NCBI GenBank assembly: GCA_001179505.1
Contig: CDMY01000234.1
Span: forward strand, 95,361-159,360
Direction: 5' to 3'
Source: Vitrella brassicaformis CCMP3155
Lineage: Eukaryota > Protista > Chromerida
DNA length: 64,000 nt
Within the stretch, counting starts at the first letter, position 1, and each line of letters begins with the position of its first letter. The translations under genes and the position numbers were made by a program. Below, one piece after another: positions 13,805 to 55,500 of this stretch. The notes under the pieces were generated by a model. That model was not told the origin of the DNA. It worked only from the letters and a program-made list of their open reading frames with translations, and made no database searches.

Positions 13805-15331
13805 ATGGCGGCGAGATGTCAGATCATAGCCGTCTCCGAGACAGATTTGTGAGAATAAGGGATATCAAACAGTTTCCGAGCCGGCTGCCCTCATTTCTCA
13901 CTGTTTGCCCCACATCTCCCTCGTTTCTTTTCATTTTTTGGCGGGAGTGGTCGCGCGCCACCCGCCCGAGGCCCACGCAGCCCACGCAGCCCACCCTGCT
14001 CCCCGTTTGCGAAGAGGACGAGTCCACCTGATCGGCCCTGACCCTCCCGTCAGACGCTGACATCACCCTGATGCGCATCTTGCATCCCATTTCCTCTTTC
14101 CGTCCCAGAGCCTCCCGGCGCAATGTAGTCGTCTGCCTGGCCTTCCCAAGGCACCCACTACTGCGTCCGCCGTCTGCAAGGTCCCCAAGTACAGCGCCGG
14201 GGCGACCGATGATGCAGACCCGTCGTCATTCTTCTGGGTCTTCGAGGCCAAGGCGCCGCACGGCGAAGGGTCGGACTTCAGACGGCGCCTTGCCAACGAC
14301 ACGCGAGCGCTGCTGGGCGAGGAGGTGCCCATCGAGTACATGTCGGAGGAGCAGGCTGAGGGAACACACCTGCCACGGCTGCCTAACCCGCCGGTCACGA
14401 ACCTTGACCGGACGCATCCATCCATCCATCCATCTATCTTTTGTGTGTGTGTCTGTGTGTATGTGTGTGCAGGAGGCACTTGCGGCTGGGGCTGCTGCTG
14501 CTGCTGATGGTGGTGGTGGTGATGATGACGATGGCAACGAGGATGAAGTCGAGGACGAGGAGGAGGTCAGCGGAGAGAGATGGGATAGGATAGGATGGGA
14601 TGGGATGGCACACATGCGCTCTTGCGTGCGTCGTGTGTGTCGATCTGTGTGTGAATGGGCGTGTGTGTATGGTGACAGGATAACGACGACAAATACGAGG
14701 ACGAGAAGGTCAGCCAGACACCTCACGCACCGAACCATGCACCCTTGACATCCCCCTCCCTCTCTGTGTGTTGAATGAGTGCAGGCGGTCAAGGCCAAGT
14801 CGAAAGCCAAGCGAGCGGCCAAGCGCACCGATGACCCAGGTAACTGCCGACTCAGAAAGAACTGATGCTTGCAGCAATGAGAGACATGCACACGTGTGTG
14901 TGTGTTTGTGTGAAAGAGTGGAAGCCCAAATGCCTTCGCGAACAAGCCAAGGGCCTCCCCAAGCACTTCACAGCCAGAATATTTCATTTTGTATTTTGTT
15001 AGACTGCTTTGCAGCTATCTATGGGTATTGTCCATGTGTGTTCGCAGTACCAGAGTGACGTCCGGGGCGTCTCTTACAAGAAAAGAGACCACTCCTGGAT
15101 CGCGACCTGGTACGAGTGGGGCCGGCCAAAGTGCGCCAGGTTCTGGGTGGGGGGCATCACCCAGACAGACAGACAGACAGAGAGATGGGTGTCGTGTGAT
15201 GCGGATGAGTCCACGCAAGACACACCTCCATGTGCAGAGTCGGAGAGACACGCAGGGCGCCCCTCACCCTGTGCGGCAGCGGCAGCGGCAGGCGAGGAGA
15301 CCATGGGAGAGGCAGACCAATCAAACGGACA
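13805..15331 (+). pseudogene. 5'-truncated AAA+-like/linker/AP2 family gene; AP2 domain interrupted after the beta strands
   Basis: Spliced MAARCQIIAVSETDF|RLPGLPK...VPKYSAG..., acidic exons, then EWKPKCLREQAK and AP2 exon from 15048 YQSDVRGVSYKKRDHSWIATWYEWGRPKCARFWVGG. The C-terminal AP2 helix is missing, and a TGA lies in frame just upstream of the ATG. Confidence 0.65.
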
Positions 15332-15863: not shown

Positions 15864-17392
15864 AGGTCTAAGGCCCACCTGGTGGACAAGCTAGAGCGCG
15901 AGCTGCGCATCCTCAGCAACCAGGTCAGGTTCGTCCTCGCCGTCGTCAACGAAGAACTCGAAATCCGCAACCGGTCGGTGGGTCCTCATCCACCACACAC
16001 ACACACGGACGGGCTCACCTGCACATGGGTTGATGTAATGTGTGTGTGTGTGTGTGTTTGTCGGTTATCAGGAAGCGTCAGTTGCTGTTGGACGAGCTGC
16101 ACAACTTGGGGTTCGACGCCATGAGTGCCATCCTGGAGGGGGCCCACAAGGGGCCCGAGGGCGACGTCCCTGACCCCGACCAAGTAGACAAGGAGGTCGG
16201 TGCACCACCCACCCTCCCACACACACCAACCACACACAAAGCCAGACAGGCAGCTGTGTGTGTCATTGTGCTTGTGCTTGTGATTGTGTGTGTTGTGTGC
16301 TTAGGATGAGTCGGTTGAGGACGGTGACGAGGGCATGGGTGTGGTCAAGGACAAGGACTACGGCTACCTCCTCGGCATGGCCATGTGGAACCTTACACAG
16401 GAAAAGGCAAGCCACGCCATCCACACAACCACACACACACACCATTAGACAGACGCCCAGTCTCTCTCTCCGTCTCTCGCTCCGTGTCTGTGTGTGTGTG
16501 TGAGTAGTCAGAGGAGTTGCGCAAGCAGAAGGGCTACAAGGAGACCGAGCTCGACACGCTCAGGAAGACCACCGAGCACCAGCTGTGGGAGAAGGACCTC
16601 GACGCCCTCGATGAACAGGTAAGGTACCCCCTCCCTCCCTCCCTCCCTCCCTCCCTCCCCCACACACATACATGTGTGTGTGTGTGTCTGTGTGTGTGGT
16701 GTGTGGTTGTCAGGATCGCATTGACGAGGACGATCCCGCAGCCGAGTTGAACGGGAAGAAGGGCAAGCGCAAGAAGGTCATGTTCTCACGGCCCAAGGGC
16801 AAGGCCGCCAAGAGACGCTTCCCCGCCGCCAACAAAGCCAGGGCCAAAGCCGCCAGAGCCAAGAAGAACAAGGTCGATGGCGTAAGCAAGCCCGTACACC
16901 CATGCATATCCTCCCACGCACACATACACACATGGATGCATATGTGCAGACATTTATATTCTGTCTGTCTGCTTTTCTGTGCGCGTGTGTGTCTGTGTGT
17001 CTCAGTTCACGGATTTCAGCGACAGCGACGAAGAAAACCAGCTACTCTGTAGTCGCCTCCCTGACCCTCTGGCCAATGTCAGCTTCCAATCCATCCATCC
17101 ATCCATCTATCCTCTGTGTGTGTGTGTGTGTGTGTGCGTGTGTGTTCGACAGGGGCAGGATGGCGGCAAGGACAAGGAGAAGGAGTCGAGTGAGGAGAGA
17201 GACGCCCACATGAAGCTCGTCGACGCCGACGACGACCATGACGACGACCATGACGATGACATGGGGCAGGGGGCTGGTGCTGCTGCTGGTGGCGGCAAGG
17301 CGGCAAAGGCCAAGGCCAAGGCCAACGACAAGAAGGAGCAGCACAAGAAGGACAAGCGCGAGTCTCTCCTCGACGACAAACTAGTACACACA
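15864..17392 (+). pseudogene. TOP2: DNA topoisomerase II (type IIA) C-gate/C-terminal fragment
   Basis: Exons 15864-15973 RSKAHLVDKLERELRILSNQVRFVLAVVNEELEIRNR, 16072-16195 KRQLLLDELHNLGFD..., 16305-16406 ...DYGYLLGMAMWNLTQEK (GC donor), 16508-16618 EELRKQK..ELDTLRKTTEHQLWEKDLDALDEQ. ATPase, TOPRIM and catalytic Tyr regions are absent from the window. Confidence 0.85.
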
Positions 17393-17469
17393 CAACACAC
17401 ACACAGTCCACACACAAAGTGCAGGTGTGCCTCCCTCTCTCTCTCTCTCTCTCTGCGTGTGTGTGTGGT

Positions 17470-18180
17470 CAGTTCGCTGACGATGACGATGAGGATGTCG
17501 ACGAGGACCAAGACGGGGACGAGGAGAGTGAGGAGGTCAGAAAATAGAAAGAAAGAAAGAAAGAAAGAAAGAGAGATGAGATGCCACATACATGCGCTCT
17601 TGCAGGCATCGTGTGTGCTGATGCATGTACATGTGACATCTCATTTCCTCTTTCCGTCCCTCCCGGTGCAGCCGGCTAAGGACGATGATCAGAAAGGTAT
17701 GCGCCCATCGATGCTTGCAGCAATGAGAGACATGCACATGTTTGTATGTGTGTGTTTGTGTGAAAGAGTGGACGCCAACATGCCGGCGCCGACAAGCCAA
17801 GGGCATCCCCGAGTTGCAAACGGGGACGTTGGTACATCTGATGCTCGAAAAGAGCGTCTGGTAAGTGCAGGAAGGGCGAGGAGAGAGGGAGACGGAAAAG
17901 GGTTCACCCTCATCGCATCGATGTGTGTCTCGCCCCTGCAGGTTCGTGATTGTCACGAATGTGGGCCAGTTGCCTGTCGGATTGCTGGCTGACCTCACCC
18001 ACGACCCTCGCTCCAAAATTGCGGTCATTGGTACAGATGCGTAGCAGAAAGATCGATCGGGCGCTGCCTCTTTTTGCCACTGTACTCGCTGTCTCTTGCA
18101 ACAACGAGGAGCGACTACGAGGAGGACCAGCAGCAGAAGAAGAAGAAGGCCAAGGAGAAGAGAGAAGACAATGCGGGCCG
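17470..18180 (+). pseudogene. Chimeric fragment: family linker exons fused to an inverted partial copy of the 22.2-22.5 kb AAA+-like exons
   Basis: FADDDDEDVDEDQDGDEESEE|PAKDDDQK|EWTPTCRRRQAKGIP-ELQTGTLVHLMLEKSVW|FVIVTNVGQLPVGLLADLTHDPRSKIAVIG. About 17810-18095 is the reverse complement of about 22175-22465, including an intron. Confidence 0.8.
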
Positions 18181-18863: not shown

Positions 18864-20448
18864 TGGAGTAATGGAGACACCACCTTTGGTTGACACCTTA
18901 GCCTGCTTGGAGAAGATGGATGCAATCAAGCGCACAGCTGAATGCCAAGTGTCAATGTCTCATGCACCACTTCCGTCCATCCATCCATCCATCGATCTAT
19001 CCGTCGGTCCATCGATCACCACACCCGTCCATCTACCCACCGCTGCACTCAAACTAACGACCCCAGCCAGCCAGCCCGCCTCTCTGTGATCTTCGTCTTT
19101 CTTCCTTTCTCGTGGTGCGGACCACCAGACAGCCAGCCAGACAGCCGCACAGACGCAACCGATCTTCTCTACTCTGCAAGTAGGTCAAATGCAAGGCACG
19201 CACCAGGCAGCCACGCAGTCAGTTTGGACACACAGACACACTCTTCCTAAGAGTGTCCACCGAGAGGAAGTGTCTCAAGCCCACCACAGGCACAGAGACA
19301 CCCGCGAAAGTGCGCGATGGGCCAGCAGCAGACAATGGCAGCCAGCCAGCCAGCCAGCCAGGTGAAAGACATAAACACTGATAGACTAGATGAGTGTGTG
19401 TGTTTTTGTGTATGTACGCCCGGTGCCGAACTCAGACCCCATCGCCTCTCGTCACACGCGGGCTCTCTGGACCTCTGCGACGTACCAGAGACATTCCCGC
19501 TCGCAAGTGTGCGCTTCGAGAGGAAAGGCCCCAAGCCCACCACAGAGGGAGAGAGACACCCGCAAAAATGCGCGAGGGGCCAGCGGCAGACAAATCCAAT
19601 TGTGGTATGTCGTATGTGATGGTGGGAAAAAAACTACGAGCGGAGTGATAGCGAGCGAGAAGGGGGGACGGGTGAACGGACATGGACACACTACTGACAG
19701 ACAGACAGACAGACAGACACGATTAGAAAATATATCGCGCGGGTGCACCGTTGTGCGCATCTCTCTCTTCATTCCTCCCAGCGACCGACACACAGACAGA
19801 CAGGGAGGTGATGATGATGGCATGGTGGTACGAGAAATGTGTGACGTGTGTCTGTGTGCAGGCAGGCAGGTAGGCAGGCAGGCAGGTAGGTAGGCAGGCA
19901 GGCAGCGTAGCAGCAGCCTATCCACCCATGCACTCCTCCTCCATCCATTCCACCCACCCAGCCGTGACGCAAAAGACCTGACTACCACGTTTGCCTCTTC
20001 ACCACTGAGTGCACACGCATTCGTGTTAGTTAGTTATGTGCCGTGGAAGTGGTTGCTTGATTGACTGACTGGTGGTGGGGAAACAAGGAAGCGCTTGTGT
20101 GTGTGTGTGTGTGTGTGTGCGATGAATGTGTGGGCAAAAGGCGTGTTGGGACACAGACAGAACACACAGCACAATCAGCCAGACGTGTCCACAGTGACAC
20201 CCCCAGACAGGCAGACAGACAGACAGTCGGGCAGTCGGTCGGTTGGCACCACATGCCGTCACCACGGGGAATGGTGGACAGGGGTGGCGGGCAGGCAGGA
20301 AGGCCGACTCTCTCCCTTGACCATCTATCCATCCGTCTGTTCAGCACAAGACACCGTAGGCAGCCAGGCAGGCAGGCAGGCAGACAGTCAGCAGATACAG
20401 GCCTCTCTCTCGTCGTAACCCTCACTCACCGTCCAGCCGTCCGTGAAC

Positions 20449-20811
20449 TCATCGAGAGTGCTTCTGTCGGTGTGCGATGGCGCTCGCCTATTATCATGCA
20501 AAGAGAAGAGGCACGCAAATTGAAGAGGCCGGCTGGCGTCTCTATCACGTGGGCTGTGTTGTTGGCAAACTGACCTTTGCCCGGGCGAACCCAAGTGCCT
20601 TGATCGAGAAAAGCTTGTACCTGCGCCGGCCGCTCTCGTACCAGGTGGCCATCCAGCCATGATCTTTCTCCTTGTAGGTGACTCCACGAACGTTGCTCTG
20701 ATACTGCGAGCACACACACACAGATGGCTGCGAGGCAGTCTAACAAAATACAAGATGAAATACCTTCACCTTCTTGGCCTGCGTGCATGTGTGTGTAGGG
20801 GTCCAGTCTCC

Positions 20812-20846
<35 letters not shown>

Positions 20847-23059
20847 TGTGTGTGCATGTCTGTCATTGCTGCATGAGTAGGCACATACCGTCCTCGTCCT
20901 CGTCATCGCTGTTTTTGTGTGTGCGCTTGGCCGCCTGCACTCATTCGACACACAGGGAGGGAGTGAAGGAGTGGGCTGTCACATGTGCATCGCTGGTCTG
21001 TGAGATGTGGCTGACCTTAGGTTTCGGTTCGTAGTTCTCGTCGTCATCCTGCCACTATACACACACATCAACACACAAGATACATGCAAGAGCGCATGTC
21101 GCATCCCATCCCATCTGTCTGTCTGTCTGTCTCTGTCTCTCTCTGGCTGACTGACCTCCTCCGTCTCCCCATCTGCGTCTTCATCCTCGTCTTCGTCGTC
21201 GTCTTCATCCTCGTCGTCCTCGTCGTTTTCGTCGTCCTCGTCGGGGTACTGACAACACACACACATCACACCCCCCAGGAAAGAGGGAGACAGCGAGGCA
21301 CACATGCACTGTGTGCCTTCTCTGTGTGTGGTAAATGGTGTGAATGGTGTGAATGTGTGTGTACCAGGTCATCTTGGACGAGCGATTTGGCCTTGGTCTT
21401 TCCCTTGGCAGCCGCCGCCGCCGCCGCCGCTCCGAGCTCCTCATCTGACATACGTGTGCACATGTGTGCTCATTTATCAGCTCTCCGAGCTGGCACGTAC
21501 CTGTGGCGGTCCACCTGATGCACCTCGCCTGCTGGCCGGCCCCTGTCACTGTAGTTATCTCATAGCGACCTCCACTGTCGCAGTCGCTCTCACGCACGGC
21601 GTCCAAGAGCTTCTTCAGCTCAGCAGCTTCGTCCGGCTTGAAGTTCTGATGGTTTTGGTGGTGTGGGGGGGCCAGGACCTGTCGTTGGTGAGGGGAGCAG
21701 CGGGGCCGAGTCTGATCTGCGGGTGGCGGCTGAACACACTGACACACACGCCCACAGAGAGAGAGAAAGAGAGAGAGCGACGAGTGCGTGAGAGGGTGTG
21801 TGTGTGTGTGTGCGTCTGCGTCTGCGTGTGTGTGTACTGACCTCCTGTGGTTTGCCCCTGATGTCATTGCCCAGGGAGGACATCTCGAGGTCGGCCACCT
21901 TGGCTCCGCGGCCGGCGGGTGTGACAGTGTTGTTCTCCTGTCGGGCCCCGGGAGGGCCGGTGATTTTCTTGTTTGTGAGTTGCTTGGTCTCGTCCAGGTG
22001 GAAAATCTTATACTTGGGCGTGGCATTGGGATCTGAGGCATAGCAAGAGAAACACAGGCCGGCATATGACAGCTTTTTGCAATGAGTCGCTCAGTGGATA
22101 CTATACCATCAGAGGCGCTGCTGCTGCAGCTGAGTGAATGTGATCCATTGGTGTCCAGGCCTGCAAAAGACAGCGAGTACAGTGGCAAAAAGAGGCAGCG
22201 CCCGATCGATCTTTCTGCTACGCATCTGTACCAATGACTGCAATTTTGGAGCGAGGGTCGTGGGTGAGGTCAGCCAGCAATCCGAGAGGCAACTGGCCCG
22301 CATTCGTGACAATCACGAACCTGCAGGGGCGAGACACACATCGATGCGATGAGGGTGAACCCTTTCCCGTCTCCCTCTCTCCTCGCCCTTCCTGCACTTG
22401 CCAGATGCCCTCCTTCTTTTCGAACTTTTCCAGCATCAGATCTAGCAACGCCCCCGTGTGCAGCTCTCCGCCGACGGTAGCGTGATGAAACATAAGCTGC
22501 ACCTCATTACTGCCCCCCCAAATGGCCTCGCAGATGTCCCGCAGCACATTGGCCGCACCACACACACCGTCGACAGGCCGTACTCGTGGCTGGAAGGGCT
22601 GCGTGGCTCTGTCGAACGTGGCGATGTGTGTGTTGATGGTCTTCTCGACGAGACGCTCCACTGCGATGGCGTCTTGGGGGGTGGAACGGACGACAACAAG
22701 GTCTCCACAGTTCACACGGGAGCACCTGCGACGCACACAGGCAAAGGCAGGCCTCATTTTGGGGGCGACTGAGAGAATGCACATGCCACGCAACCACCAC
22801 TGAAGAGAGCGTCCACAGTGTCATGCATCGTGGAACGCGTGACACCCATGAGACGGTAGGCACCCCCGAGGCACAATAGAGCCGCTCAATGCGCATGAGG
22901 TTGCGGGAGTGTGCGGAGGAAGAAGTGGTGCATTTCCCGTGGGGCTCACCGTTCTATGATGGCTCGAAGGTCTTCCATGACGTCTGTCGGGTGGGGAAGA
23001 CTCCGAACTTCTCCCCCCTTCCCGCACTTCTTAGCTCGCACGATCGGCAGCCTCCCCAT
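20449..23059 (-). CDS. Intact 13-exon gene: degenerate Cdc6/Orc1-like AAA+ region + acidic/basic linker + C-terminal ApiAP2 DNA-binding domain
   Basis: All 12 junctions were checked and keep frame (one GC donor). N-term ...MEDLRAIIER|CSRVNCGDLVVVRST...IW|FVIVTNAGQLPLGLLADLTHDPRSKIAVIG|LDT...; C-term YQSNVRGVTYKEKDHGWMATWYESGRRRYKLFSIKALGFARAK|ASAIAHRQKHSR*. The AP2 call is strong; the AAA+ call is inference. Confidence 0.82.
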
Positions 23060-23171
23060 CTGAAGGATATGATGTCGCTGGATCTTCATCAAGGTGATGA
23101 ATCACGTCATGCAAATCTTGCACGGATGCGACTAATTGAGTCCTTTTCTTCTCGCAGGTGAGATGTGAACG

Positions 23172-24411
23172 ATGGGCAATACCCTCGCTGCATTCGCGCC
23201 AACTCAGCCACTCCCTCATCATCGCCCTCCCTTCGTCAGACCTCTCGTTCAGCCTCTCGCCCGACGGAGGCCCGTGCGGCGCACCGACGCTCCCATCGCA
23301 TGTGCAGCCTCTCTGGAAGAGCATGAGTGGCGGAGATCTGCCCGGCGCCACCGAAGGGACGTGCTGGGACTGCTAGGGATGGAGAACGAAGGCGACGAGG
23401 TGTCTGTGAAGCTGCACCACGACCCAGCCCATCCCATCTTCAACTTCATTCTGGAGTATTACGGCTTCAACCACGCTGATCTGCATCGCTACTCGCCTGG
23501 CTCGTGCATCTTCCTCCAGGGCGCTCTGGCGGACGATCCCAGGCTGCACAGAAAAGCATTCGTGGCGGCCGAGGGCGGCGGGTTCTTCGACCCTGGCCTC
23601 ATCCCAGAGAAGCGCTTGGCGTGGTTCAAGTGGATTGCGGAGCTGCTGCGGGTGACAATGGACCGTGAGCCGTCATTCAAGTGCTTTGGTTGGAGGACAC
23701 AAGGCGTGGATGAGAGGGGGAAGGCATGGTTGGGTGTCTGTCTGCTTGTGCGCAGGTCTTCACGAGTGGGCGATGCTGTATCGCCCGGCTGCAGATGAGG
23801 ACGCGCCTGTCAGCCGGTTCCAACAACTGCGACTGCGACTCAGCCAACAAGAGCTCAACATGGTAGGTGCTAAAGTGACCCGCCCCAACACAACACAACA
23901 CAACACAGACATCACAATGCCGATGTGTCCATGCTCTGTGTGGGCGCAGGTCGTTGAGGCCGGCCTGCTTTCGTGCACTCACTATGACGCCTCGCGCCAC
24001 TTCCCACACTCCGCCCTCCCCCTCAACGCCATCCAGCCGCCGCCATCCAAGTCAAGACGGCTCAATTTGGAACAACCTGGGTGCGTCCACACCAACATGG
24101 ACCTCTTCAAGTGGGCCGTCAAGGCCGTCCCATTCATCCCCAGCGACATCGTCCGGGAGGCCCTCAGCATTGCCATCGAGGCGCGGGTCCTGGACATGCG
24201 TGCGAGTCCGTATGACCTGACCAAGGTGTCTCTGCAAAGGGGCTCGGCGGACTTTGATGCATCGCCTGTGAGGGTGGAGACGGCTGGAGGGCGGGAAGAC
24301 TATCAGCTGATGCAGTGGGCGATACATCGGAGGGCGAAGCCTCTTCGCGAGCGGCTGCTACACCATTACGAGAAGATGCTGACCGACGCTGCTGGGCGGA
24401 GGAGGCCGTGA
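23172..24411 (+). CDS. Conserved uncharacterised protein of a mostly bacterial family (often labelled 3-methyladenine DNA glycosylase in actinobacteria)
   Basis: Motifs HPIFNFILEYY, FKCFG|LHEWAMLYR, CTHYDASRHF, EQPGCVHTNMDLFKWA, ARVLDMRASPYDL, ETAGGREDY. Two introns. Confidence 0.8.
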
Positions 24412-25511: not shown

Positions 25512-27145
25512 ATGGCGGCGAGATTTCAGATCATAGCCGTCTCCGAGACAGATTTGTGAGAATAAGGGACATCAAACAGTTTCCGAGCCGGCTGTCCTCA
25601 TTTCTCACTGTTTGCCTCACATCTCCCTCGTTTCTTTTCATTTTTCGGCGGGAGTGGTCGGGCGCCACCCGCCCGAGGCCCACGCAGCCCACCCTGCTCC
25701 CCGTTTGCGAGTCCACCTGACCGCCCCTGAACCTCCCGTCAGACGCTGACATGCCCCTGATGCGCATGTTGCATCCCATTTCCTCTTTCCGTCCCTCCCG
25801 GCGCAATGTAGTCGTCTGCCTGGCTTTCCCAAGGCACCCACTACTGCATCCGCCGTCTGCAAGGTCCCCAAGTACAGCGCCGGGGCGACCGATGATGCAG
25901 ACCCGTCGTCATTCTTCTGGGTCTTCGAGGCCAAGGCGCCGCACGGCGAGGGGTTCAGACGGCGTCTGGCCAACGACACGCGAGCGCTGCTGGGCGAGGA
26001 GGTGCCCATCGAGTACATGTCGGAGGAGCAGGCTGAGGGAACACACCTACCACGGCTGCCTAACCCACCGGTCACGAACCTTGACCGGACGCATCCATCC
26101 ATCCATCCATCTATCTTGTGTGTGTGTGTGTGTGTGTGTGTGTCTGTGTGTATGTGTGTGCAGGGGGCACTTGCGGCTGCGGCTGCTGCTGCTGCTGATG
26201 GTGGTGGTGATGATGATGATGACGATGGCAACGAGGATGAAGTCGAGGACGAGGAGGAGGTCAGAGGAGAGAGATGGGATGGGATGGGATGCCACACACA
26301 TACGCTCTTGCGTGCGTCGTGTGTGTCAATGTGTGTGGGTAAATGGGCGTGTGTGTTTGGCGGCAGGATAACGACGACGAATACGAGGACGAGACTTCCA
26401 AGAAATCCAAGGTCAGCCAGACACCTCACGCACAAAACAATGCACCCGTGACATCCCCCTCCCTCTCTGTGTGTTGAATGAATCAGACGGCAAAGGCCAA
26501 GCGCACCGATGACCCAGGTTACTGCCGACTCAGAAAGAACTGATGCTTGCAGCAATGAGAGACATGCACACGTGTGTGTGTTTGTGTGAAAGAGTGGAAG
26601 CCCAAATGCCGCGGCCCACAAACCAAGGGCCCCCGCAAGCACTCTAAAGCGAGAGTATTTCATTTTGTATTTTGTGAGACTGCAGTCTTTGCAGCTATCT
26701 GTGTGTATTGTCTATGTGTGTTCGCAGTATCAGAGTGGTAAATCGGGAGTGCTCTACCACGAGAAAGACAACGCCTGGATCGCCAAGTGGACCGAGAGGG
26801 GCCGGTACCGCTACAAGTCGTTCTGCATCAATTCACTTGGGTTTGCCGACGCGCTGGTCAGTTTGCCAACAACACAGCCCACGTGATAGAGATGCAAGCC
26901 GGCCTCTGCAACTTGCGTGCCTCTTCTCTGTGATCAGTTCGCTGACGATGACGATGAGGATGTCGACGAGGACCAAGACGGGGACGAGGAGAGTGAGGAG
27001 GTCAGAAAGAAAGAACGAGAGAGATGGGATGCCACATACATGCGCTCTTGCACGCATCGTGTGTGTTGATGCATGCACATGTGACATTTCATTTCCTCTT
27101 TCCGTCCCTCCCGGTGCAGCCGGCTGAAAACGAGGATCCAGAAGG
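25512..27145 (+). pseudogene. Second 5'-truncated AAA+-like/linker/AP2 family copy, AP2 lacking the final helix exon
   Basis: 25472-26760 is co-linear with 13766-15080, introns included. The AP2 exon 26728-26856 reads YQSGKSGVLYHEKDNAWIAKWTERGRYRYKSFCINSLGFADAL, then jumps to the acidic exon also seen at 17470. Confidence 0.7.
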
Positions 27146-51427: not shown

Positions 51428-51980
51428 GTGGTTTCTCGCAAGGCGGTGCGCTGGCGGTTCACACGGCATTGAACTACGGGTCGTCTGAGGCCGTCAAGGC
51501 GTGTGTGGGTCTGTCGTCGTGGCTGCCGGTGGCCTCGTCATACGACGGCAACACTGACAAGGTGGAGGCCATCAAGAGGAAGCAGCTGCCAATGCTCATG
51601 TGCCATGGCACCGGTAACACAGTCCGGGCGCAATACAAGGCACTGCGCAACACCGACCTACGCACAAAGATCCATCGTATGGTGCGTATATTGATTGTAT
51701 ACATTTGGTGTGTGGCATACAGCTGACCAGGTGGTTGCATTCGATTGGGGCGTGAGGAGCAGGGACTTCCTCATCAAGACACTCGGCGTGGACGTGCAGG
51801 TCGGCCGGCCACTCATTCACATCTATCAAACAGTCTGCTCACCTCACCCTTTTGGACTGACGTCTTTGGGCGTGTGTGTGTGTGTGTGTGCAGTGGGAGA
51901 CGCTGAATGGTGTTGGCCACGGCTCGAGTGAAGATGAGATGCGCTCTGTGGCCAACTTCCTGCAGAGGGTCCTCAGCTAG
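50559..51980 (+). CDS. Phospholipase/carboxylesterase (acyl-protein thioesterase-like) with N-terminal extension
   Basis: IWLHGLGDT, LILPTAPTRRVTL|NFGMAMPAWWDI, nucleophile G|GFSQGG, HGT|ADQVV (Asp), GVGHGS (His). Confidence 0.9.
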
Positions 51981-52509
51981 CAGCCCCGTCGCTACCCTGG
52001 TGCGAAGTGTATCATATGATAGAAGGTGCGTAATGCGGCTAAAGCACAATGAATTCATTCATTTCTGCAATCAATCAGCCAGTAGTTTTGACTGACACGT
52101 CACGTGTGTGCGTGCAACCTCCTGTGTGCTGTGTGTGTGTGCGCTGATGTTGGCACACCACACCCAGCCTGAGTGTTTTGACTGACTAGCTTCCACGACA
52201 TGATTGCCTGCCTGCCGAAGAAGCACAGACAGCACCAACATGCTCCCTGTGTGTTGGTTCATCCGTCCATCCGTCCGTCCGTCCACTCATTCGGAGAGTC
52301 CGGCAGCATAGCATGTGCATCCAATACGCTCGTGTCACTCATCCCATGCAATCAATCACCCACCGTCAGTCGAATAATTCACTTGTACGCCCACATACCA
52401 ACACCCCCCACACCCACACCCACACCCACGTGCATGTTCGCAGCTATACATCCCGCCACACCCCCACCCACCCACCCATTGCACCGAATTCTGTGTGTCT
52501 CTCCCTCTC

Positions 52510-55500
52510 TCATGGCATGACTATGTGGGCCCCGCTGCCCAGCCACTCCGCCAGGCTCTCCATGTCGGCATCGTCACCACCACCACCACCACCATTTGCA
52601 CCAGCACCCGGCCCCTCGTCGATGTCCATCCCTTTCCCCTCCCCCTCTCCCTTTCCCTCTCCCTCTCCCTCACTACCGTCATCGCCGCCACCATGGTCCG
52701 ATGAGTCCTCCTCTGCGGCCAGCCGGCACCGCGCCACGTCCACGCGGCACTGCCAGTCCGATGCTCGCGCCATGTCCTCCATGCGCCTCCGCAGTGGAGC
52801 CAGCACACGCTGATCGTTCCATACCATCGGCTGCCGACTCCGCCCCTTGCCGCGTGACGCCCTCCTCTTGGGCGACGCGGCCTCATCCCCCGCTGTCTCG
52901 GCTGGGTCTGCTACCTTGACCACCTCGCCCTCACGCCCCCCGCACCACTGGCCGCACAGCACCTCCTCCCCCAGCCCACCAAACACGGGCAGCGTCTCCT
53001 CGACGGCGGCGCGCTTGGCTTTGGGGAGGGGCCGGGCGTCGCTGTCCGACGGGCCGGGTGATGGGAGGGGGCTGCGGGTGCGCTTCTTGCGGTTCTGTCG
53101 CAGCACCATGCCGTGTGCGTTGGGGCCGCTGGCGAAGGGGTCGGGCTCCTGCTCTGGGTTCGGAGGTGACGACAGCCGGTAGCGGTGGTGCTGGGAGACG
53201 GTGGGCGACGGCACGTCGGGTTCCGGTGCCGGTGCCCGGCTGCATGAAAGGGTGAAAGCACCAAGGACCAGCTCGAGATCTATCTTGGCAGCGGGCGATG
53301 CAGTGGCCACGTCAGCGGGGAAGGGGTGCGTCGACAGCACCTGCCGCGAAAGCCGCAGCTCGGCCGCCAGCGACCTCTTCGCACACCTGCGACACACACA
53401 CACACACACACACGTTCAGCTGCATGGGGGGGCCATTGCACATCTGCCTGATTGCCTGGCCGCCTACCCTTCTGTGTGTTCATGGTCCTCCTTGGGTGGT
53501 GTGTCATCCTCCCCATTGCAGTCGTCTGCCGGGAGTGAGGGCGTCTTGAGGGCCACCACGGGTGAGGGGTTGGTGGCCAGAGCACCATTCGATGACAGAG
53601 TGCCCAACCGGCTGCTGGATCACACACACACACACACAAAAGAATGCACGGAGCTTTAGCTTGATCTCTTGTCGCCCTTGAGGTCACACACATACATGTT
53701 GGATGGGGGTGGCGGTGGGGGTGCTGGCGGCTTCACCCTCGACGACCGCAGCTGGTCCACCAAACGAGCCCTTAATCGACAGAGAGGCAGGCAGGCAGAC
53801 CGAAGAGTACTCATGAAGAGGGGGCTCCGTGCGGTGCGTCCTCTCTTTCATGTCATCCATACTCACTTTGGCCTGTTGCCTGCCGGCTTTCCCCGCTGGC
53901 TCTGGCCGTATCCAGGCAAGTGCACGGGCAGATGACCTCTCCTCAACTCAAACGGCGCTATGCTGAAGAAGAGGGAGGAAGAGAGCAGCAGCATCGGCTC
54001 CTGCGTGTGTCTGTGTAGAGCCTCTGTCTCTGTCTGACCTCCTGCTGGCATCCATCGGCTGCCTGCCATCGTAGTACTGATACCCTCCCTCCCACCCATC
54101 AGCCCCGCGCTCCCCACACACACCACTGCTACCGCCCAGCTCCCCAGCCTCCTCTCGCTTGGCTCTCGGCTTCTGTCTCTTGGGCTTGCTCCTGACCTTT
54201 CTGGGTGCGCGTGGCTCGTAGACGCCGTCGTCGTCATTGTCCGCAATGTCGCCGGCGAAGCGGTCCTCGGCGCGAGCATTGTCCTCGACGAATAGGTCCA
54301 GCGCCGAGATCATCTCGGCTGCGAAGGTGCTCGGCGCTGCCCTGTCGGCGGGCGGCGAGGACTTCTTCTTGCGTGGCGGCGGAACGAGGGCAGCGTTGAT
54401 GAGCTCCTTGGCTGAGTTGAGCCGGAGGATCTCGTACCTGGGGGAACCTGCAGGCAGAGAGACACAGACACACGAGGGAGGGAGGGAAGGGAATATGGAC
54501 GAAGAAAGGGTTGTTCCCTCCGTACCACTTGAGGGGCTGCTCCAGGACGGCGTGGATTCGTCACTATCGCCAACGACCGTCTGCAAGCCTGCAAAGGACA
54601 CAGCGACAAAGGCAATCGAGACGCAGGTGTTTGTGTGCGTTGGAGCCTCAGTCCCCGCCCACCTATGATGGCCACCTTTGACCGGGGGTCGGTAGTCAGA
54701 TTCGCCAGCAACGACAGCGGCAACATGTCCATGTGCGTGATCACCACGAACCTGCACACAACACAATCGCATCAGACACCAGAAGACCGCACAACAGCAT
54801 CCCTCCCTCTCTCCATCCATCCATCCATCCATTCATCCATCCATCCATCCATCGCTGTGACCCGCCCACCCACCAGATGGTCTTCTTCCACTTGAGCCGG
54901 TCGAGCATCCTCTCCACCAGCAGATGAGGGTCAACGGGGCCACCAGCCGGCGGGTCTCGGCTCCTCTCAAGCATGTCGTGCACCTCACGCATGATCCCCG
55001 CCCTGCCGCCCTTGGTCCGCCCCCACATCGCCATCGAGATGGTCCGCAGCACCGCCACAACATCGTAGGTGCCGCTCCGGCTGTCGGACGGCGAGAGGCG
55101 CACCACGTTGGGCTGGAAGGGGGTCTGCTTGGTCTTGGCGTATGTGGCCATGTGGGAAGTGAGGGTGCTCTGGACGAGCTTCTCCACCTCGCGAGCGTTG
55201 GATATCGTCGAACGGACCACCATGAGATCTCCACAGCCCTCACTATTGCATCTGCACCACACCCACACACGCAGTGGCACAGACAAGTCTGGGACCCAAT
55301 TGAATGCGCATCTATCCACGCACACTGCGTCACAGATGATCTCACAGATGGCCATGCATGTGTCAGGACAGCCCAACAGAGCCTCACGACACCTCACACC
55401 ATTGCAGTGCTCCACTGAGTCCACCGAATCGGTGATCTCACCTTGAGATGAAGGCCTCGACTTCCTCCATCTTGCTATGGGTGGCAGATTCCAGCTGCTG

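What the first reader, a model, noticed from the sequence alone, without database searches (positions are those of the whole stretch)
20449..23059. Intact gene fusing an apparently ATPase-dead Cdc6/Orc1-like AAA+ region to an ApiAP2 domain
The N-terminal region follows the Cdc6/Orc1 layout by eye. An amphipathic helix precedes GDLVVV (cf. GSLYLS), but RSTPQDAI replaces Walker A GxxGxGKT. RVRPVDG..AANVLRDICEAIWG occupies the initiator-specific region. FVIVTNAGQL replaces Walker B hhhhDE, followed by KIAVIG (sensor-1 strand, cf. LVLIGIAN) and PKY (cf. PPY). All 13 exons splice in frame to a complete AP2 domain. A sequence-specific DNA-binding domain on an ORC-like subunit has a precedent in the AT-hooks of fission-yeast Orc4. 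An AP2-tethered pseudo-ATPase could mark origins or chromatin sites, and I know of no description of this architecture.
Basis: partly seen in the sequence, partly recalled or inferred. Interest (0 to 1): 0.82.

Follow-up and report, generated by a model that had tools for sequence, protein, structure and literature searches.

The report
Dead ORC/Cdc6-like domain fused to AP2
An expressed, 13-exon gene of the alga Vitrella brassicaformis joins a predicted ORC/Cdc6-type ATPase fold that has lost its ATP-binding motifs to an AP2 DNA-binding domain; I found this combination only in this species and in no paper searched, and its function is still inferred.

Summary
A minus-strand gene (23059..20449) is spliced exactly as a 13-exon ORF in RNA-derived contigs of four public runs. 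Two boundaries needed correction (exon 6 starts at 21738, exon 11 ends at 20770). Intron 2 is a GC-AG intron. The product is 490 aa and ends in an AP2 domain (Pfam E 1.2e-10).

The N-terminal ~180 aa has no Pfam, NCBIfam or PDB sequence match. I could not fold the spliced domain of this gene itself. I folded two paralogs, one 79% and one 38% identical. Both AlphaFold2 models, and the ESM Atlas's own model of the closer paralog, match ORC/Cdc6 AAA+ domains best (VIA Z 12.6 and 12.1; the top 11-12 rows are all Orc1, Cdc6, Orc4, Orc5 or Sir3). Language-model features point to ORC3_N.

RST-PQD stands where Walker A should be and TN where Walker B's DE should be. There is no lid and no winged helix.

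The family (at least six loci plus fragments) was found only in Vitrella. One divergent member (1304 aa) also ends in AP2 domains.

This gene looks like a fairly young chimera. Exons 1-5 are 87% identical in DNA to another locus, and exons 8-12 (acidic linker and AP2 exon) match a local AP2 cassette.

The fold reading is supported. A role at replication origins is untested. My best guess is a Sir3/Orc2-like, nucleotide-free interaction module tethered by AP2. Another window's reader called this stretch a dead NYN fold; that reading is not supported.

The parts
22950..23059 (-). Coding exon 1 (aa 1-36). Alternative in-frame start M28 at 22978. The helix MEDLRAIIER precedes beta1.
   Evidence: Sequence. 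Joint 22950|22725 in X8 record 15. P0001 starts at the residue equivalent to M28.
22402..22725 (-). Coding exon 2 (aa 37-144). Holds beta1 GDLVVV, RSTPQD in place of Walker A, alpha1, the strand RVRPV and the helices of the insert between beta2 and beta3.
   Evidence: Secondary structure transferred from the models.
22321..22401 (-). Intron 2: 81 nt, GC-AG, in frame if retained.
   Evidence: Joint in X7 record 11, depth 102. Donor TG|GCAAGT read.
22232..22320 (-). Coding exon 3 (aa 145-174). FVIVTN stands where Walker B would be, and KIAVIG is the sensor-1 strand.
22107..22160 (-). Coding exon 4 (aa 175-192): Ser-rich loop.
   Evidence: Joints 22032|22107 in X7 and X8. 16-nt overhangs at 22231 in X1 and X7.
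21842..22032 (-). Coding exon 5 (aa 193-256). Holds beta5 (PKYKIFHL) and one helix, then disorder. Homology to the P0001 locus ends near 21858.
21501..21738 (-). Coding exon 6 (aa 257-335), acceptor corrected to 21738. Holds a short module AAELKKLLDAVRES..RYEITTV of unknown fold.
   Evidence: Contiguous pieces 21738|21842 in X1 record 3 and X7 record 9. Weak similarity to P0002 824-879.
20770..21444 (-). Exons 7-11 with their introns (exons 21444-21365, 21248-21156, 21054-21016, 20934-20889, 20810-20770). Together they encode the poly-Ala/Lys stretch and a strongly acidic linker (42 D/E in 100 aa).
   Evidence: Joints. Composition.
20575..20703 (-). Coding exon 12: AP2 domain, three strands and the start of the helix.
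   Evidence: Pfam PF00847, E 1.2e-10. PDB phmmer hit to T. gondii AP2IX-6, E 6.5e-9.
20449..20487 (-). Coding exon 13: end of the AP2 helix (ASAIAHRQKHSR) and the TGA stop.
   Evidence: Joint 20487|20575 in four runs. Aligns with AAIAHRR of the second AP2 of P0002.
20337..20429 (-). 93-nt GT-AG intron in the 3' UTR.
   Evidence: Loose ends at 20430 in X1, X2, X7 and X8 continue with the letters at window 20307-20336.
54661..55289 (-). In-window paralog of the N-terminal domain. It is 36-63% identical, has the same intron position and keeps GDLMVVRST, with no AP2 exon found nearby.
   Evidence: tblastn. Frames.
17811..18100 (+). Inverted duplicate (91% nt identity) of the end of exon 2, intron 2, exon 3 and part of intron 3. 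It is annotated as the tail of a TOP2-fragment gene (P0003).
26278..26932 (+). Paralogous acidic-linker and AP2 exon cassette (68% nt identity) in the divergently transcribed neighbour. A third copy lies at 14520-15158 (+).

Best explanation
This is a real, transcribed gene of Vitrella brassicaformis.

Shown:
- It encodes a 490-aa protein (463 aa if translation starts at M28).
- Its C-terminus is a complete AP2 domain.

Predicted:
- Residues ~28-206 are predicted to form the alpha/beta base of an AAA+ ATPase.
- The closest structural matches are the ORC/Cdc6 initiator group.

Shown at sequence level and by position in the models:
- The phosphate-binding loop is missing. RST then PQD joins beta1 directly to alpha1.
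- The Walker B acidic pair is replaced by TN.
- There is no lid domain, so no sensor 2.
- There is no winged helix.
The domain therefore should not bind or hydrolyse ATP.

Inferred:
- The AP2 domain fixes the protein at specific DNA sites.
- The nucleotide-free AAA+ shell serves as a protein-protein interaction or oligomerisation surface. Comparable cases are the AAA+-like domain of yeast Sir3 and the non-catalytic subunits Orc2 and Orc3.
- The long acidic linker may contact histones or basic partners.

Inferred from the DNA comparisons:
- The gene arose recently. Exons 1-5 of a Vitrella-specific gene family became joined to a local acidic-linker-plus-AP2 exon cassette.
For: Gene and splicing.

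AP2.

Fold:
- AF2 of P0001:1-215, which is 79% identical to this gene over 230 aa: pLDDT 71, pTM 0.69.
- AF2 of P0002:195-415: pLDDT 71.3, pTM 0.72, with three of five models at 68 or more.
- Foldseek on PDB is led by A. pernix ORC1, Sir3, Orc2 and ORC4, at E about 1e-3.
- Atlas shape search: archaeal ORC1-type proteins, TM 0.55.
- The Atlas's own ESM model of P0001 (poor overall: pTM 0.30, pLDDT 0.44) matches, over residues 1-190, Cdc6, ORC4 and ORC1 at TM 0.60-0.67. Language-model features rank ORC3_N first at 0.90 for both paralogs.

Dead motifs: the alignment and the regex scan. GDL[VM]VVRST is present in every member that covers that column.

Family and constraint:
- Only Vitrella hits among 1.84 billion representatives and in the profile word search.
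- P0002 combines the same domain with two AP2 domains.
- dN/dS against the P0001 locus is 0.62 (bootstrap 0.40-0.96), and 0.47 in the folded core.

Chimera: 86.8% nt identity to L001 from 21858 to 23040, introns included, ending inside exon 5. The AP2 cassette has paralogs at 66-68% nt identity.
Against: - No sequence-level link to any AAA+ family. Pfam and NCBIfam give nothing even at E up to 10, and profile searches of PDB give only noise.
- The models rest on 7-row alignments of paralogs. In the first run only one of five models was confident.
- The spliced domain of this very gene could not be submitted. The fold is transferred from a paralog that is 79% identical.
- Foldseek E-values are weak (about 1e-3) and TM by query is about 0.45.
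- No experiment or co-occurrence supports any particular partner.
- The gene is young. The dN/dS upper bound is near 1, and exons differ more than introns do, so selection for the fused product is not proven.
- Some ApiAP2 domains do not act on DNA at all. The closest solved AP2 is a T. gondii mitoribosomal protein (PMC11742926).
Confidence: 0.6

Rival explanations
1. Origin or ORC adaptor. The pseudo-ATPase docks into or beside the Vitrella ORC/Cdc6 ring through AAA+-AAA+ interfaces. The AP2 domain gives the complex sequence-specific origin or heterochromatin targeting, as the AT-hooks of fission-yeast Orc4 do.
For: The best structural matches are specifically ORC/Cdc6 subunits rather than other AAA+ clades. 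ORC3_N is the top language-model hit. The same pairing of this domain with AP2 occurs in the divergent paralog P0002.
Against: There is no lid or winged-helix domain, and those domains form much of the inter-subunit contact in ORC (established knowledge). There is no arginine finger context. The family is restricted to one species and evolves fast, which is unlike a core replication factor. Nothing here tests binding to ORC.
Confidence: 0.1
2. A young chimeric gene with no selected function of its own. It would be a by-product of a local duplication and exon-shuffling hot spot, transcribed and spliced because it inherited working signals, and intact only because it is recent.
For: - Exons 1-5 are 87% identical in DNA, introns included, to the P0001 locus, with a sharp breakpoint inside exon 5.
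- An inverted 91%-identical fragment of exons 2-3 sits 4 kb away, attached to a TOP2 fragment.
- AP2 cassette copies flank the gene.
- The dN/dS interval reaches 0.96, and dN (0.116) exceeds intron divergence (0.071).
Against: - All 12 coding introns are spliced and the 490-codon frame is open.
- dN/dS in the folded core is 0.47.
- The AP2 exon scores above Pfam's gathering cut-off (41.9 bits against 33.3).
- An old paralog (38% identical) keeps the same domain pairing.
- GDL.VVRST and LPL..LA.L are conserved across the family.
Confidence: 0.2
3. The N-terminal region is a catalytically dead NYN/PIN-like nuclease fold followed by an R3H-like segment. This is the reading of another first-stage reader of the same stretch (s1-218655).
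For: The beta-alpha-beta layout with hydrophobic strands (LVVV, FVIV) is compatible by eye with many Rossmann-like folds. That is the only support, and it is by inference.
Against: No NYN, PIN or R3H structure appears among the 50 best rows of either exhaustive structure search, or in the Foldseek lists. Pfam finds no NYN or R3H in any piece, even at E up to 10.
Confidence: 0.03
4. The AP2 domain is not a DNA-binding transcription-factor module here. It would serve as a structural or RNA-associated scaffold, as in the four ApiAP2 proteins built into the Toxoplasma mitoribosome.
For: The closest solved AP2 sequences are T. gondii AP2IX-6 and AP2VIIb-2, from ribosome-scale entries. PMC11742926 shows that ApiAP2 proteins have been repurposed in the mitoribosome. 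The optional N-terminal 27 residues are basic.
Against: Few ApiAP2 structures exist, so the closest solved one is not evidence of orthology. The acidic linker and ORC-like domain suit a nuclear protein. The paralogs lack the basic N-terminal extension.
Confidence: 0.05

Closest known systems
Yeast Sir3 AAA+-like domain (PDB 3te6), an Orc1 paralog
   Same: An ORC/Cdc6-type AAA+ shell. By established knowledge it no longer binds nucleotide and works as an interaction surface in chromatin silencing. It is among the best structural matches (Z 10.5 and 9.8).
   Different: Sir3 keeps the lid subdomain and is recognisably homologous to Orc1 in sequence. It uses a BAH domain for nucleosome binding. 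The Vitrella domain has only the alpha/beta base, no detectable sequence similarity, and a sequence-specific AP2 domain instead.
Non-catalytic ORC subunits Orc2 and Orc3
   Same: Degenerate AAA+-like folds without working Walker motifs that act as scaffolds. Orc2 chains lead the Foldseek lists, and ORC3_N is the top language-model cluster.
   Different: They carry winged-helix domains and are universal, slowly evolving, single-copy replication factors. This family has many copies, is confined to Vitrella and evolves fast.
Orc1/Cdc6 initiators (archaeal Orc1/Cdc6, eukaryotic Orc1, Cdc6, Orc4)
   Same: Best overall fold matches (Z up to 12.6, 138-152 aligned residues). There is an N-terminal helix before beta1 and extra helices between beta2 and beta3, where the initiator-specific motif lies.
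   Different: No Walker A, no Walker B, no lid, no winged helix, and no Pfam AAA_16, AAA_22 or Cdc6 match.
Fission-yeast Orc4 with AT-hooks, and Sulfolobus Orc1-2
   Same: Precedents for an ORC-type protein that carries its own DNA-targeting module (Orc4, from my own knowledge), or that works as a transcription regulator rather than an initiator (Orc1-2, abstract of PMC9738581, seen).
   Different: By established knowledge Orc4 is an intact AAA+ subunit of ORC, and the PMC9738581 abstract gives Orc1-2 an AAA+ ATPase domain, ISM and winged helix. Here the ATPase is dead and truncated, and no ORC link is shown.
ApiAP2 proteins of apicomplexans and chromerids
   Same: A C-terminal AP2 domain above the Pfam cut-off. 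Chromerid ApiAP2s are known to be numerous and to have expanded by duplication (PMC4501334).
   Different: The accessory domains listed for ApiAP2s are AT-hook, zinc finger and ACDC (PMC11742926). No paper searched pairs ApiAP2 with an AAA+ or ORC-like domain.

Membership tests
AAA+ ATPases, initiator (ORC/Cdc6) group | Alpha/beta Rossmann-like core superposable on ORC/Cdc6 AAA+ bases | tested here: met
   This rests on predicted models only. VIA Z is 12.6 and 12.1, with 138-152 residues aligned at rmsd 3.0-4.1 A and the top 11-12 rows all ORC/Cdc6/Sir3. The ESM Atlas's own model, made by a different predictor, agrees (TM 0.60-0.67).
AAA+ ATPases, initiator (ORC/Cdc6) group | Walker A P-loop GxxxxGK[ST] between beta1 and alpha1 | tested here: not met
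   The sequence reads VVVRST-PQDA. Helix alpha1 starts one residue after beta1 in both models. No GK[ST] occurs in the domain of any member. The only regex hit (AAAAKGKT, aa 345) lies in the Ala/Lys linker.
AAA+ ATPases, initiator (ORC/Cdc6) group | Walker B hhhhD[DE] at the end of beta3 | tested here: not met
   FVIVTN in this gene. The other members have VVVTN, FVIPH, VVITH and IVIEG.
AAA+ ATPases, initiator (ORC/Cdc6) group | Sensor-1 polar residue at the end of beta4 | tested here: inconclusive
   The strand KIAVIG is followed by LDT. Without model coordinates I could not assign the residue.
AAA+ ATPases, initiator (ORC/Cdc6) group | Helical lid subdomain with sensor 2, and an arginine finger | tested here: not met
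   After beta5 the models are disordered, with pLDDT below 50. There is no Cdc6_lid or AAA_lid Pfam match.
AAA+ ATPases, initiator (ORC/Cdc6) group | Initiator-specific extra helix between beta2 and beta3 | tested here: inconclusive
   Three helices lie between beta2 and beta3 (67-78, 85-98 and 107-118 in P0001), where a canonical AAA+ has a single helix. Residue-level superposition was not available.
AAA+ ATPases, initiator (ORC/Cdc6) group | C-terminal winged-helix DNA-binding domain | tested here: not met
   No WHD_Cdc6 or WHD_ORC match. The C-terminus consists of low-complexity linker plus AP2.
AAA+ ATPases, initiator (ORC/Cdc6) group | Sequence-profile membership (Pfam AAA_16, AAA_22, AAA, ORC families) | tested here: not met
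   Zero families at E up to 10 in Pfam and NCBIfam. PDB profile searches are blank.
ApiAP2 / AP2 domain proteins | AP2 domain (PF00847) above the gathering score | tested here: met
   41.9 bits against a cut-off of 33.3, E 1.2e-10, on exon 12 alone. The last helix is on exon 13.
ApiAP2 / AP2 domain proteins | Sequence-specific DNA binding | not testable with these tools
   This needs a binding array, DAP-seq or ChIP. The caveat comes from the mitoribosomal ApiAP2s.
NYN/PIN nucleases (rival reading) | PIN-like fold or a Pfam NYN match | tested here: not met
   Absent from all fold-search lists and from Pfam.

The most novel reading that the evidence does not exclude
A Vitrella-specific gene family descends from an ORC/Cdc6-type initiator ATPase. 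It lost nucleotide binding, lid and winged helix, and was joined to AP2 domains at least twice (this gene and P0002). If so, it is a natural fusion that points to a working partnership between ApiAP2 DNA-binding proteins and ORC-type chromatin machinery in the lineage leading to malaria parasites. The partnership could be Sir3-like silencing or sequence-specified replication origins.
Probability: 0.15. Interest if true: 0.85.

Novelty: new variant of a known kind. Interest (0 to 1): 0.62.

Why it matters
ApiAP2 proteins are the main specific transcription factors of apicomplexan parasites and their algal relatives. Outside the AP2 domain they are mostly featureless, so how they recruit other machinery is largely unknown.

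A nucleotide-free ORC/Cdc6-type shell attached to AP2 would be a new kind of effector module for this family. It would also be a new example, beside Sir3, of a replication-initiator fold recycled for chromatin work.

The locus also shows how such architectures arise: a five-exon module and an AP2 exon cassette shuffled within a few kilobases.

The limits are real. The family is confined to one alga, the fold is predicted rather than solved, and no function has been tested.

Tried and rejected
Sequence searches that found nothing for the N-terminal region:
- Pfam and NCBIfam scans of every exon piece and of the paralogs' domains at E up to 10.
- Profile searches of PDB sequences with alignments A2 and A4: only noise.
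- Atlas feature search with this gene's own read-through piece (exon 2 + intron 2 + exon 3): a weak TraI hit at 0.78. I discarded it because the query carried 27 intron-encoded residues and lacked both ends of the domain.

Searches that did not return this gene's own protein:
- The word search with P0001 residues 1-215 returned only P0001 itself. I therefore never obtained this gene's annotated protein as a reference.
The two structure jobs therefore used paralogs (79% and 38% identical) instead of this gene's own domain.

Readings tested or set aside:
- NYN/R3H reading: tested and rejected.
- Transposon-ATPase reading (TnsC/MuB-like target selector plus an integrase-type AP2). TnsC and MuB score Z 7.6-9.2, at or below most ORC/Cdc6 rows. 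Intron positions are shared between copies. I looked for no transposase. I consider it unlikely, but I did not test it formally.

Not done, or failed:
- Profile-profile comparison with ORC/Cdc6 families was not possible, because no tool-supplied ORC/Cdc6 sequences were at hand.
Full report
**The gene**

The finding's interval holds a minus-strand gene. I built a 13-exon model by eye: twelve introns, eleven GT-AG and one GC-AG. I then laid the contigs of four public runs on window 20400-23100.

The contigs lack the introns, so they derive from spliced RNA. Every junction is seen:
- Exons 1-2: X8 record 15 (22725|22950).
- Exons 2-3: X7 record 11 (22320|22402). This is the GC-AG intron of 81 nt.
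- Exons 3-4: 16-letter overhangs at 22231 in X1 and X7 that spell the start of exon 4.
- Exon 4 through exon 13 and into the 3' UTR: the single 1218-nt contig X7 record 9.
- The small exons 8-12: X2 record 7.

Two boundaries of my model were wrong. Exon 6 starts at 21738, and exon 11 ends at 20770. The corrected CDS is 1473 nt and encodes 490 aa. A further 93-nt intron lies in the 3' UTR (20429..20337).

The refutation test "the exons are not co-transcribed" therefore fails. Exon 5, which carries beta5 of the N-terminal domain, and the AP2 exons sit on one contig.

The start codon is uncertain. M1 (23059) and M28 (22978) are both in frame. Contigs of this strand reach only 23012. The closest paralog is annotated from the residue equivalent to M28.

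**The organism**

The organism is Vitrella brassicaformis CCMP3155. The source names of the paralogs say so, and earlier notes of this scan agree.

**The C-terminus**

Exon 12 alone passes Pfam's AP2 gathering score (E 1.2e-10). Exon 13 adds the rest of the helix, which aligns with AAIAHRR in a paralog's AP2.

The nearest solved AP2 sequences are Toxoplasma AP2IX-6 and AP2VIIb-2. These come from ribosome-scale entries. PMC11742926 reports ApiAP2 proteins built into the mitoribosome. That is a caveat against assuming DNA binding.

**The N-terminus: sequence searches**

- Pfam and NCBIfam give nothing at E up to 10.
- An exhaustive phmmer run with the read-through of exons 2-3 against 1.84 billion representatives found three proteins. 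Sources name P0001 as Vitrella; P0002 lies on the same Vitrella contig, and P0003 matches a gene model in this window:
  - P0001 (664 aa, 79% identical over 230 aa, no AP2).
  - P0002 (1304 aa, 38% identical, domain at 195-410, two AP2 domains at the C-terminus).
  - P0003, a TOP2 C-terminal fragment whose tail is the inverted duplicate at window 17811-18038.
- A profile word search added two more Vitrella gene models, P0004 and P0005.
- The window itself holds another paralog at 55289-54661, with the same intron position.

GDL[VM]VVRST is present in every member that covers that column. LPL..LA.L is nearly so.

**The N-terminus: structure**

I therefore folded P0001:1-215 and P0002:195-415, each with a 7-row family alignment.

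| Target | Mean pLDDT (best model) | pTM | Other models |
|---|---|---|---|
| P0001:1-215 | 71.0 | 0.69 | 40-52 |
| P0002:195-415 | 71.3 | 0.72 | three of five at 68 or more |

Both models share one layout: a helix, beta1, a long helix starting one residue after beta1, beta2, three helices, beta3, a helix, beta4, a disordered Ser-rich loop, beta5, then disorder.

Results of the fold searches:
- **VIA-align, first model, against 48,161 representative chains.** The top 12 rows are Drosophila Orc1 (Z 12.6), Pyrobaculum Cdc6 (12.5), yeast Cdc6 (12.5), human ORC4 (12.2), Sulfolobus Cdc6/Orc1, human ORC1, yeast Orc4, Aeropyrum ORC2, Sir3 and Orc5. CED-4 (9.6) and TnsC (9.2) follow.
- **VIA-align, second model.** The pattern repeats: yeast Cdc6 12.1, Drosophila Orc1 11.1, and the top 11 rows all of this group.
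- **Foldseek.** E-values are weak (about 1e-3), but the lists are again led by ORC1, Sir3, Orc2, ORC4 and Cdc6.
- **Atlas shape search.** It finds archaeal ORC1-type proteins.
- **The ESM Atlas's own model of P0001.** This comes from a different predictor and is poor overall (pTM 0.30, pLDDT 0.44). Over residues 1-190 it matches Cdc6, ORC4 and ORC1 clusters at TM 0.60-0.67.
- **Language-model features.** They rank ORC3_N first (0.90) for both paralogs.

No NYN, PIN or R3H structure appears anywhere.

**Dead motifs**

- Beta1 (DLVVV) runs through RS/T straight into the helix PQDAIAVERLV. There is neither the length nor the glycines and lysine of a P-loop.
- Beta3 ends in TN. The paralogs have PH, TH or EG there instead of DE.
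- No member has GK[ST] or hhhhD[DE] in the domain.
- The one regex hit in this protein (AAAAKGKT, aa 345) sits in a poly-Ala/Lys linker far from any strand.
- After beta5 there is at most one helix. There is no lid, hence no sensor 2, and no winged helix.

So the domain resembles ORC/Cdc6 in fold but fails most of the family's defining features. I call it ORC/Cdc6-like, not a member.

**Origin of the fusion**

- Window 21858-23040 (exons 1-5 with their introns) is 86.8% identical in DNA to the P0001 locus on contig CDMY01000488.1. The homology stops inside exon 5.
- Downstream, exons 8-12 (acidic linker and AP2 exon) match two other cassettes in the window at 66-68% (26278-26932 and 14520-15126, both on the plus strand).
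- A 91%-identical inverted copy of the end of exon 2 through intron 3 lies at 17811-18100.

The gene is thus a fairly recent chimera in a local shuffling hot spot. This agrees with earlier notes s1-218475 and s1-218601.

Constraint against the P0001 locus:

| Measure | Value |
|---|---|
| dN | 0.116 |
| dS | 0.187 |
| dN/dS, whole alignment | 0.62 (bootstrap 0.40-0.96) |
| dN/dS, folded core | 0.47 |
| Intron divergence K | 0.071 |

Introns are oddly more alike than exons. I cannot explain this.

The old paralog P0002 keeps the same domain pairing. This argues that the combination is useful rather than accidental.

**Function**

Nothing here tests function. The reading I favour is an AP2-tethered, nucleotide-free AAA+ shell used as an interaction or oligomerisation surface. 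By analogy it would work like Sir3 and Orc2/Orc3, with the 42%-acidic linker as a possible histone-contact region.

It is weakened by three points:
- the lid and winged-helix domains that knit ORC together are missing;
- the family is confined to one species;
- the family evolves fast.

A neutral young chimera is a serious rival.

**Literature**

No held paper pairs ApiAP2 with an AAA+ or ORC-like domain. The chromerid genome paper describes ApiAP2 expansion by duplication. I did not see this architecture in the passages I read.

Noticed in passing
window 23053-23175 (+): A plus-strand transcript (X2 record 8) has a 5' exon covering at least 23053-23093, a 64-nt GT-AG intron (23094-23157) and an ATG at 23172 (MGNTLAAF...). 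Its 5' exon overlaps the M1 start codon of the AP2 gene head-to-head. This neighbour appears to run on to the AP2 cassette at about 26.7 kb, and its first ORFs have no Pfam match.
   Followed up: partly
window 21858-23040 against L001 5925-7136: Between this gene and the P0001 locus, exons differ more (87-94% identity; dS 0.19, dN 0.116) than introns do (93-94% identity; K 0.071). This is the reverse of the usual pattern. It could reflect diversifying selection, constrained short introns or a mutation bias. The counts are small.
   Followed up: partly
window 21365-21444 (-), aa 345-352: The string AAAAKGKT fits the Walker A regular expression. It lies in a poly-Ala/Lys low-complexity linker about 140 residues after the AAA-like domain. 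I read it as a chance match, not a P-loop.
   Followed up: yes
window 21501-21640 (-), aa ~290-332: The exon 6 segment AAELKKLLDAVRES..GGRYEITTVTGAGQQARCIRW weakly resembles P0002 residues 824-879 (E 0.004 in a tiny database). By eye a related segment recurs near P0002 residue 130. It may be a second small family module.
   Followed up: partly
window 15865-18100 (+): The annotated protein P0003 joins the C-terminal end of a type II topoisomerase (Pfam DNA_topoisoIV, E 1.3e-12) to an acidic linker and to the duplicated 50 residues of the AAA-like domain. It is probably a chimeric or decaying gene model.
   Followed up: partly
window 22162-22269: Contig X7 record 10 (341 nt, depth 4.8, two mismatches) covers intron 3 and part of exon 3. 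It then continues for 233 letters that match nothing in the stretch. It may be an unspliced or alternative transcript, or another copy.
   Followed up: no
window 51500-55500 (-): The in-window paralog continues downstream with segments like those of P0001 and P0002 (for example RLSSPPNPEQEPDPF and RLVDQLRSSRVKPP). No AP2 exon was found near it. The family therefore exists both with and without AP2.
   Followed up: partly
L002 1558-6682 and L001 6001-8872: P0002 and P0001 lie on the same 361,651-bp contig (CDMY01000488.1), about 330 kb apart.
   Followed up: no
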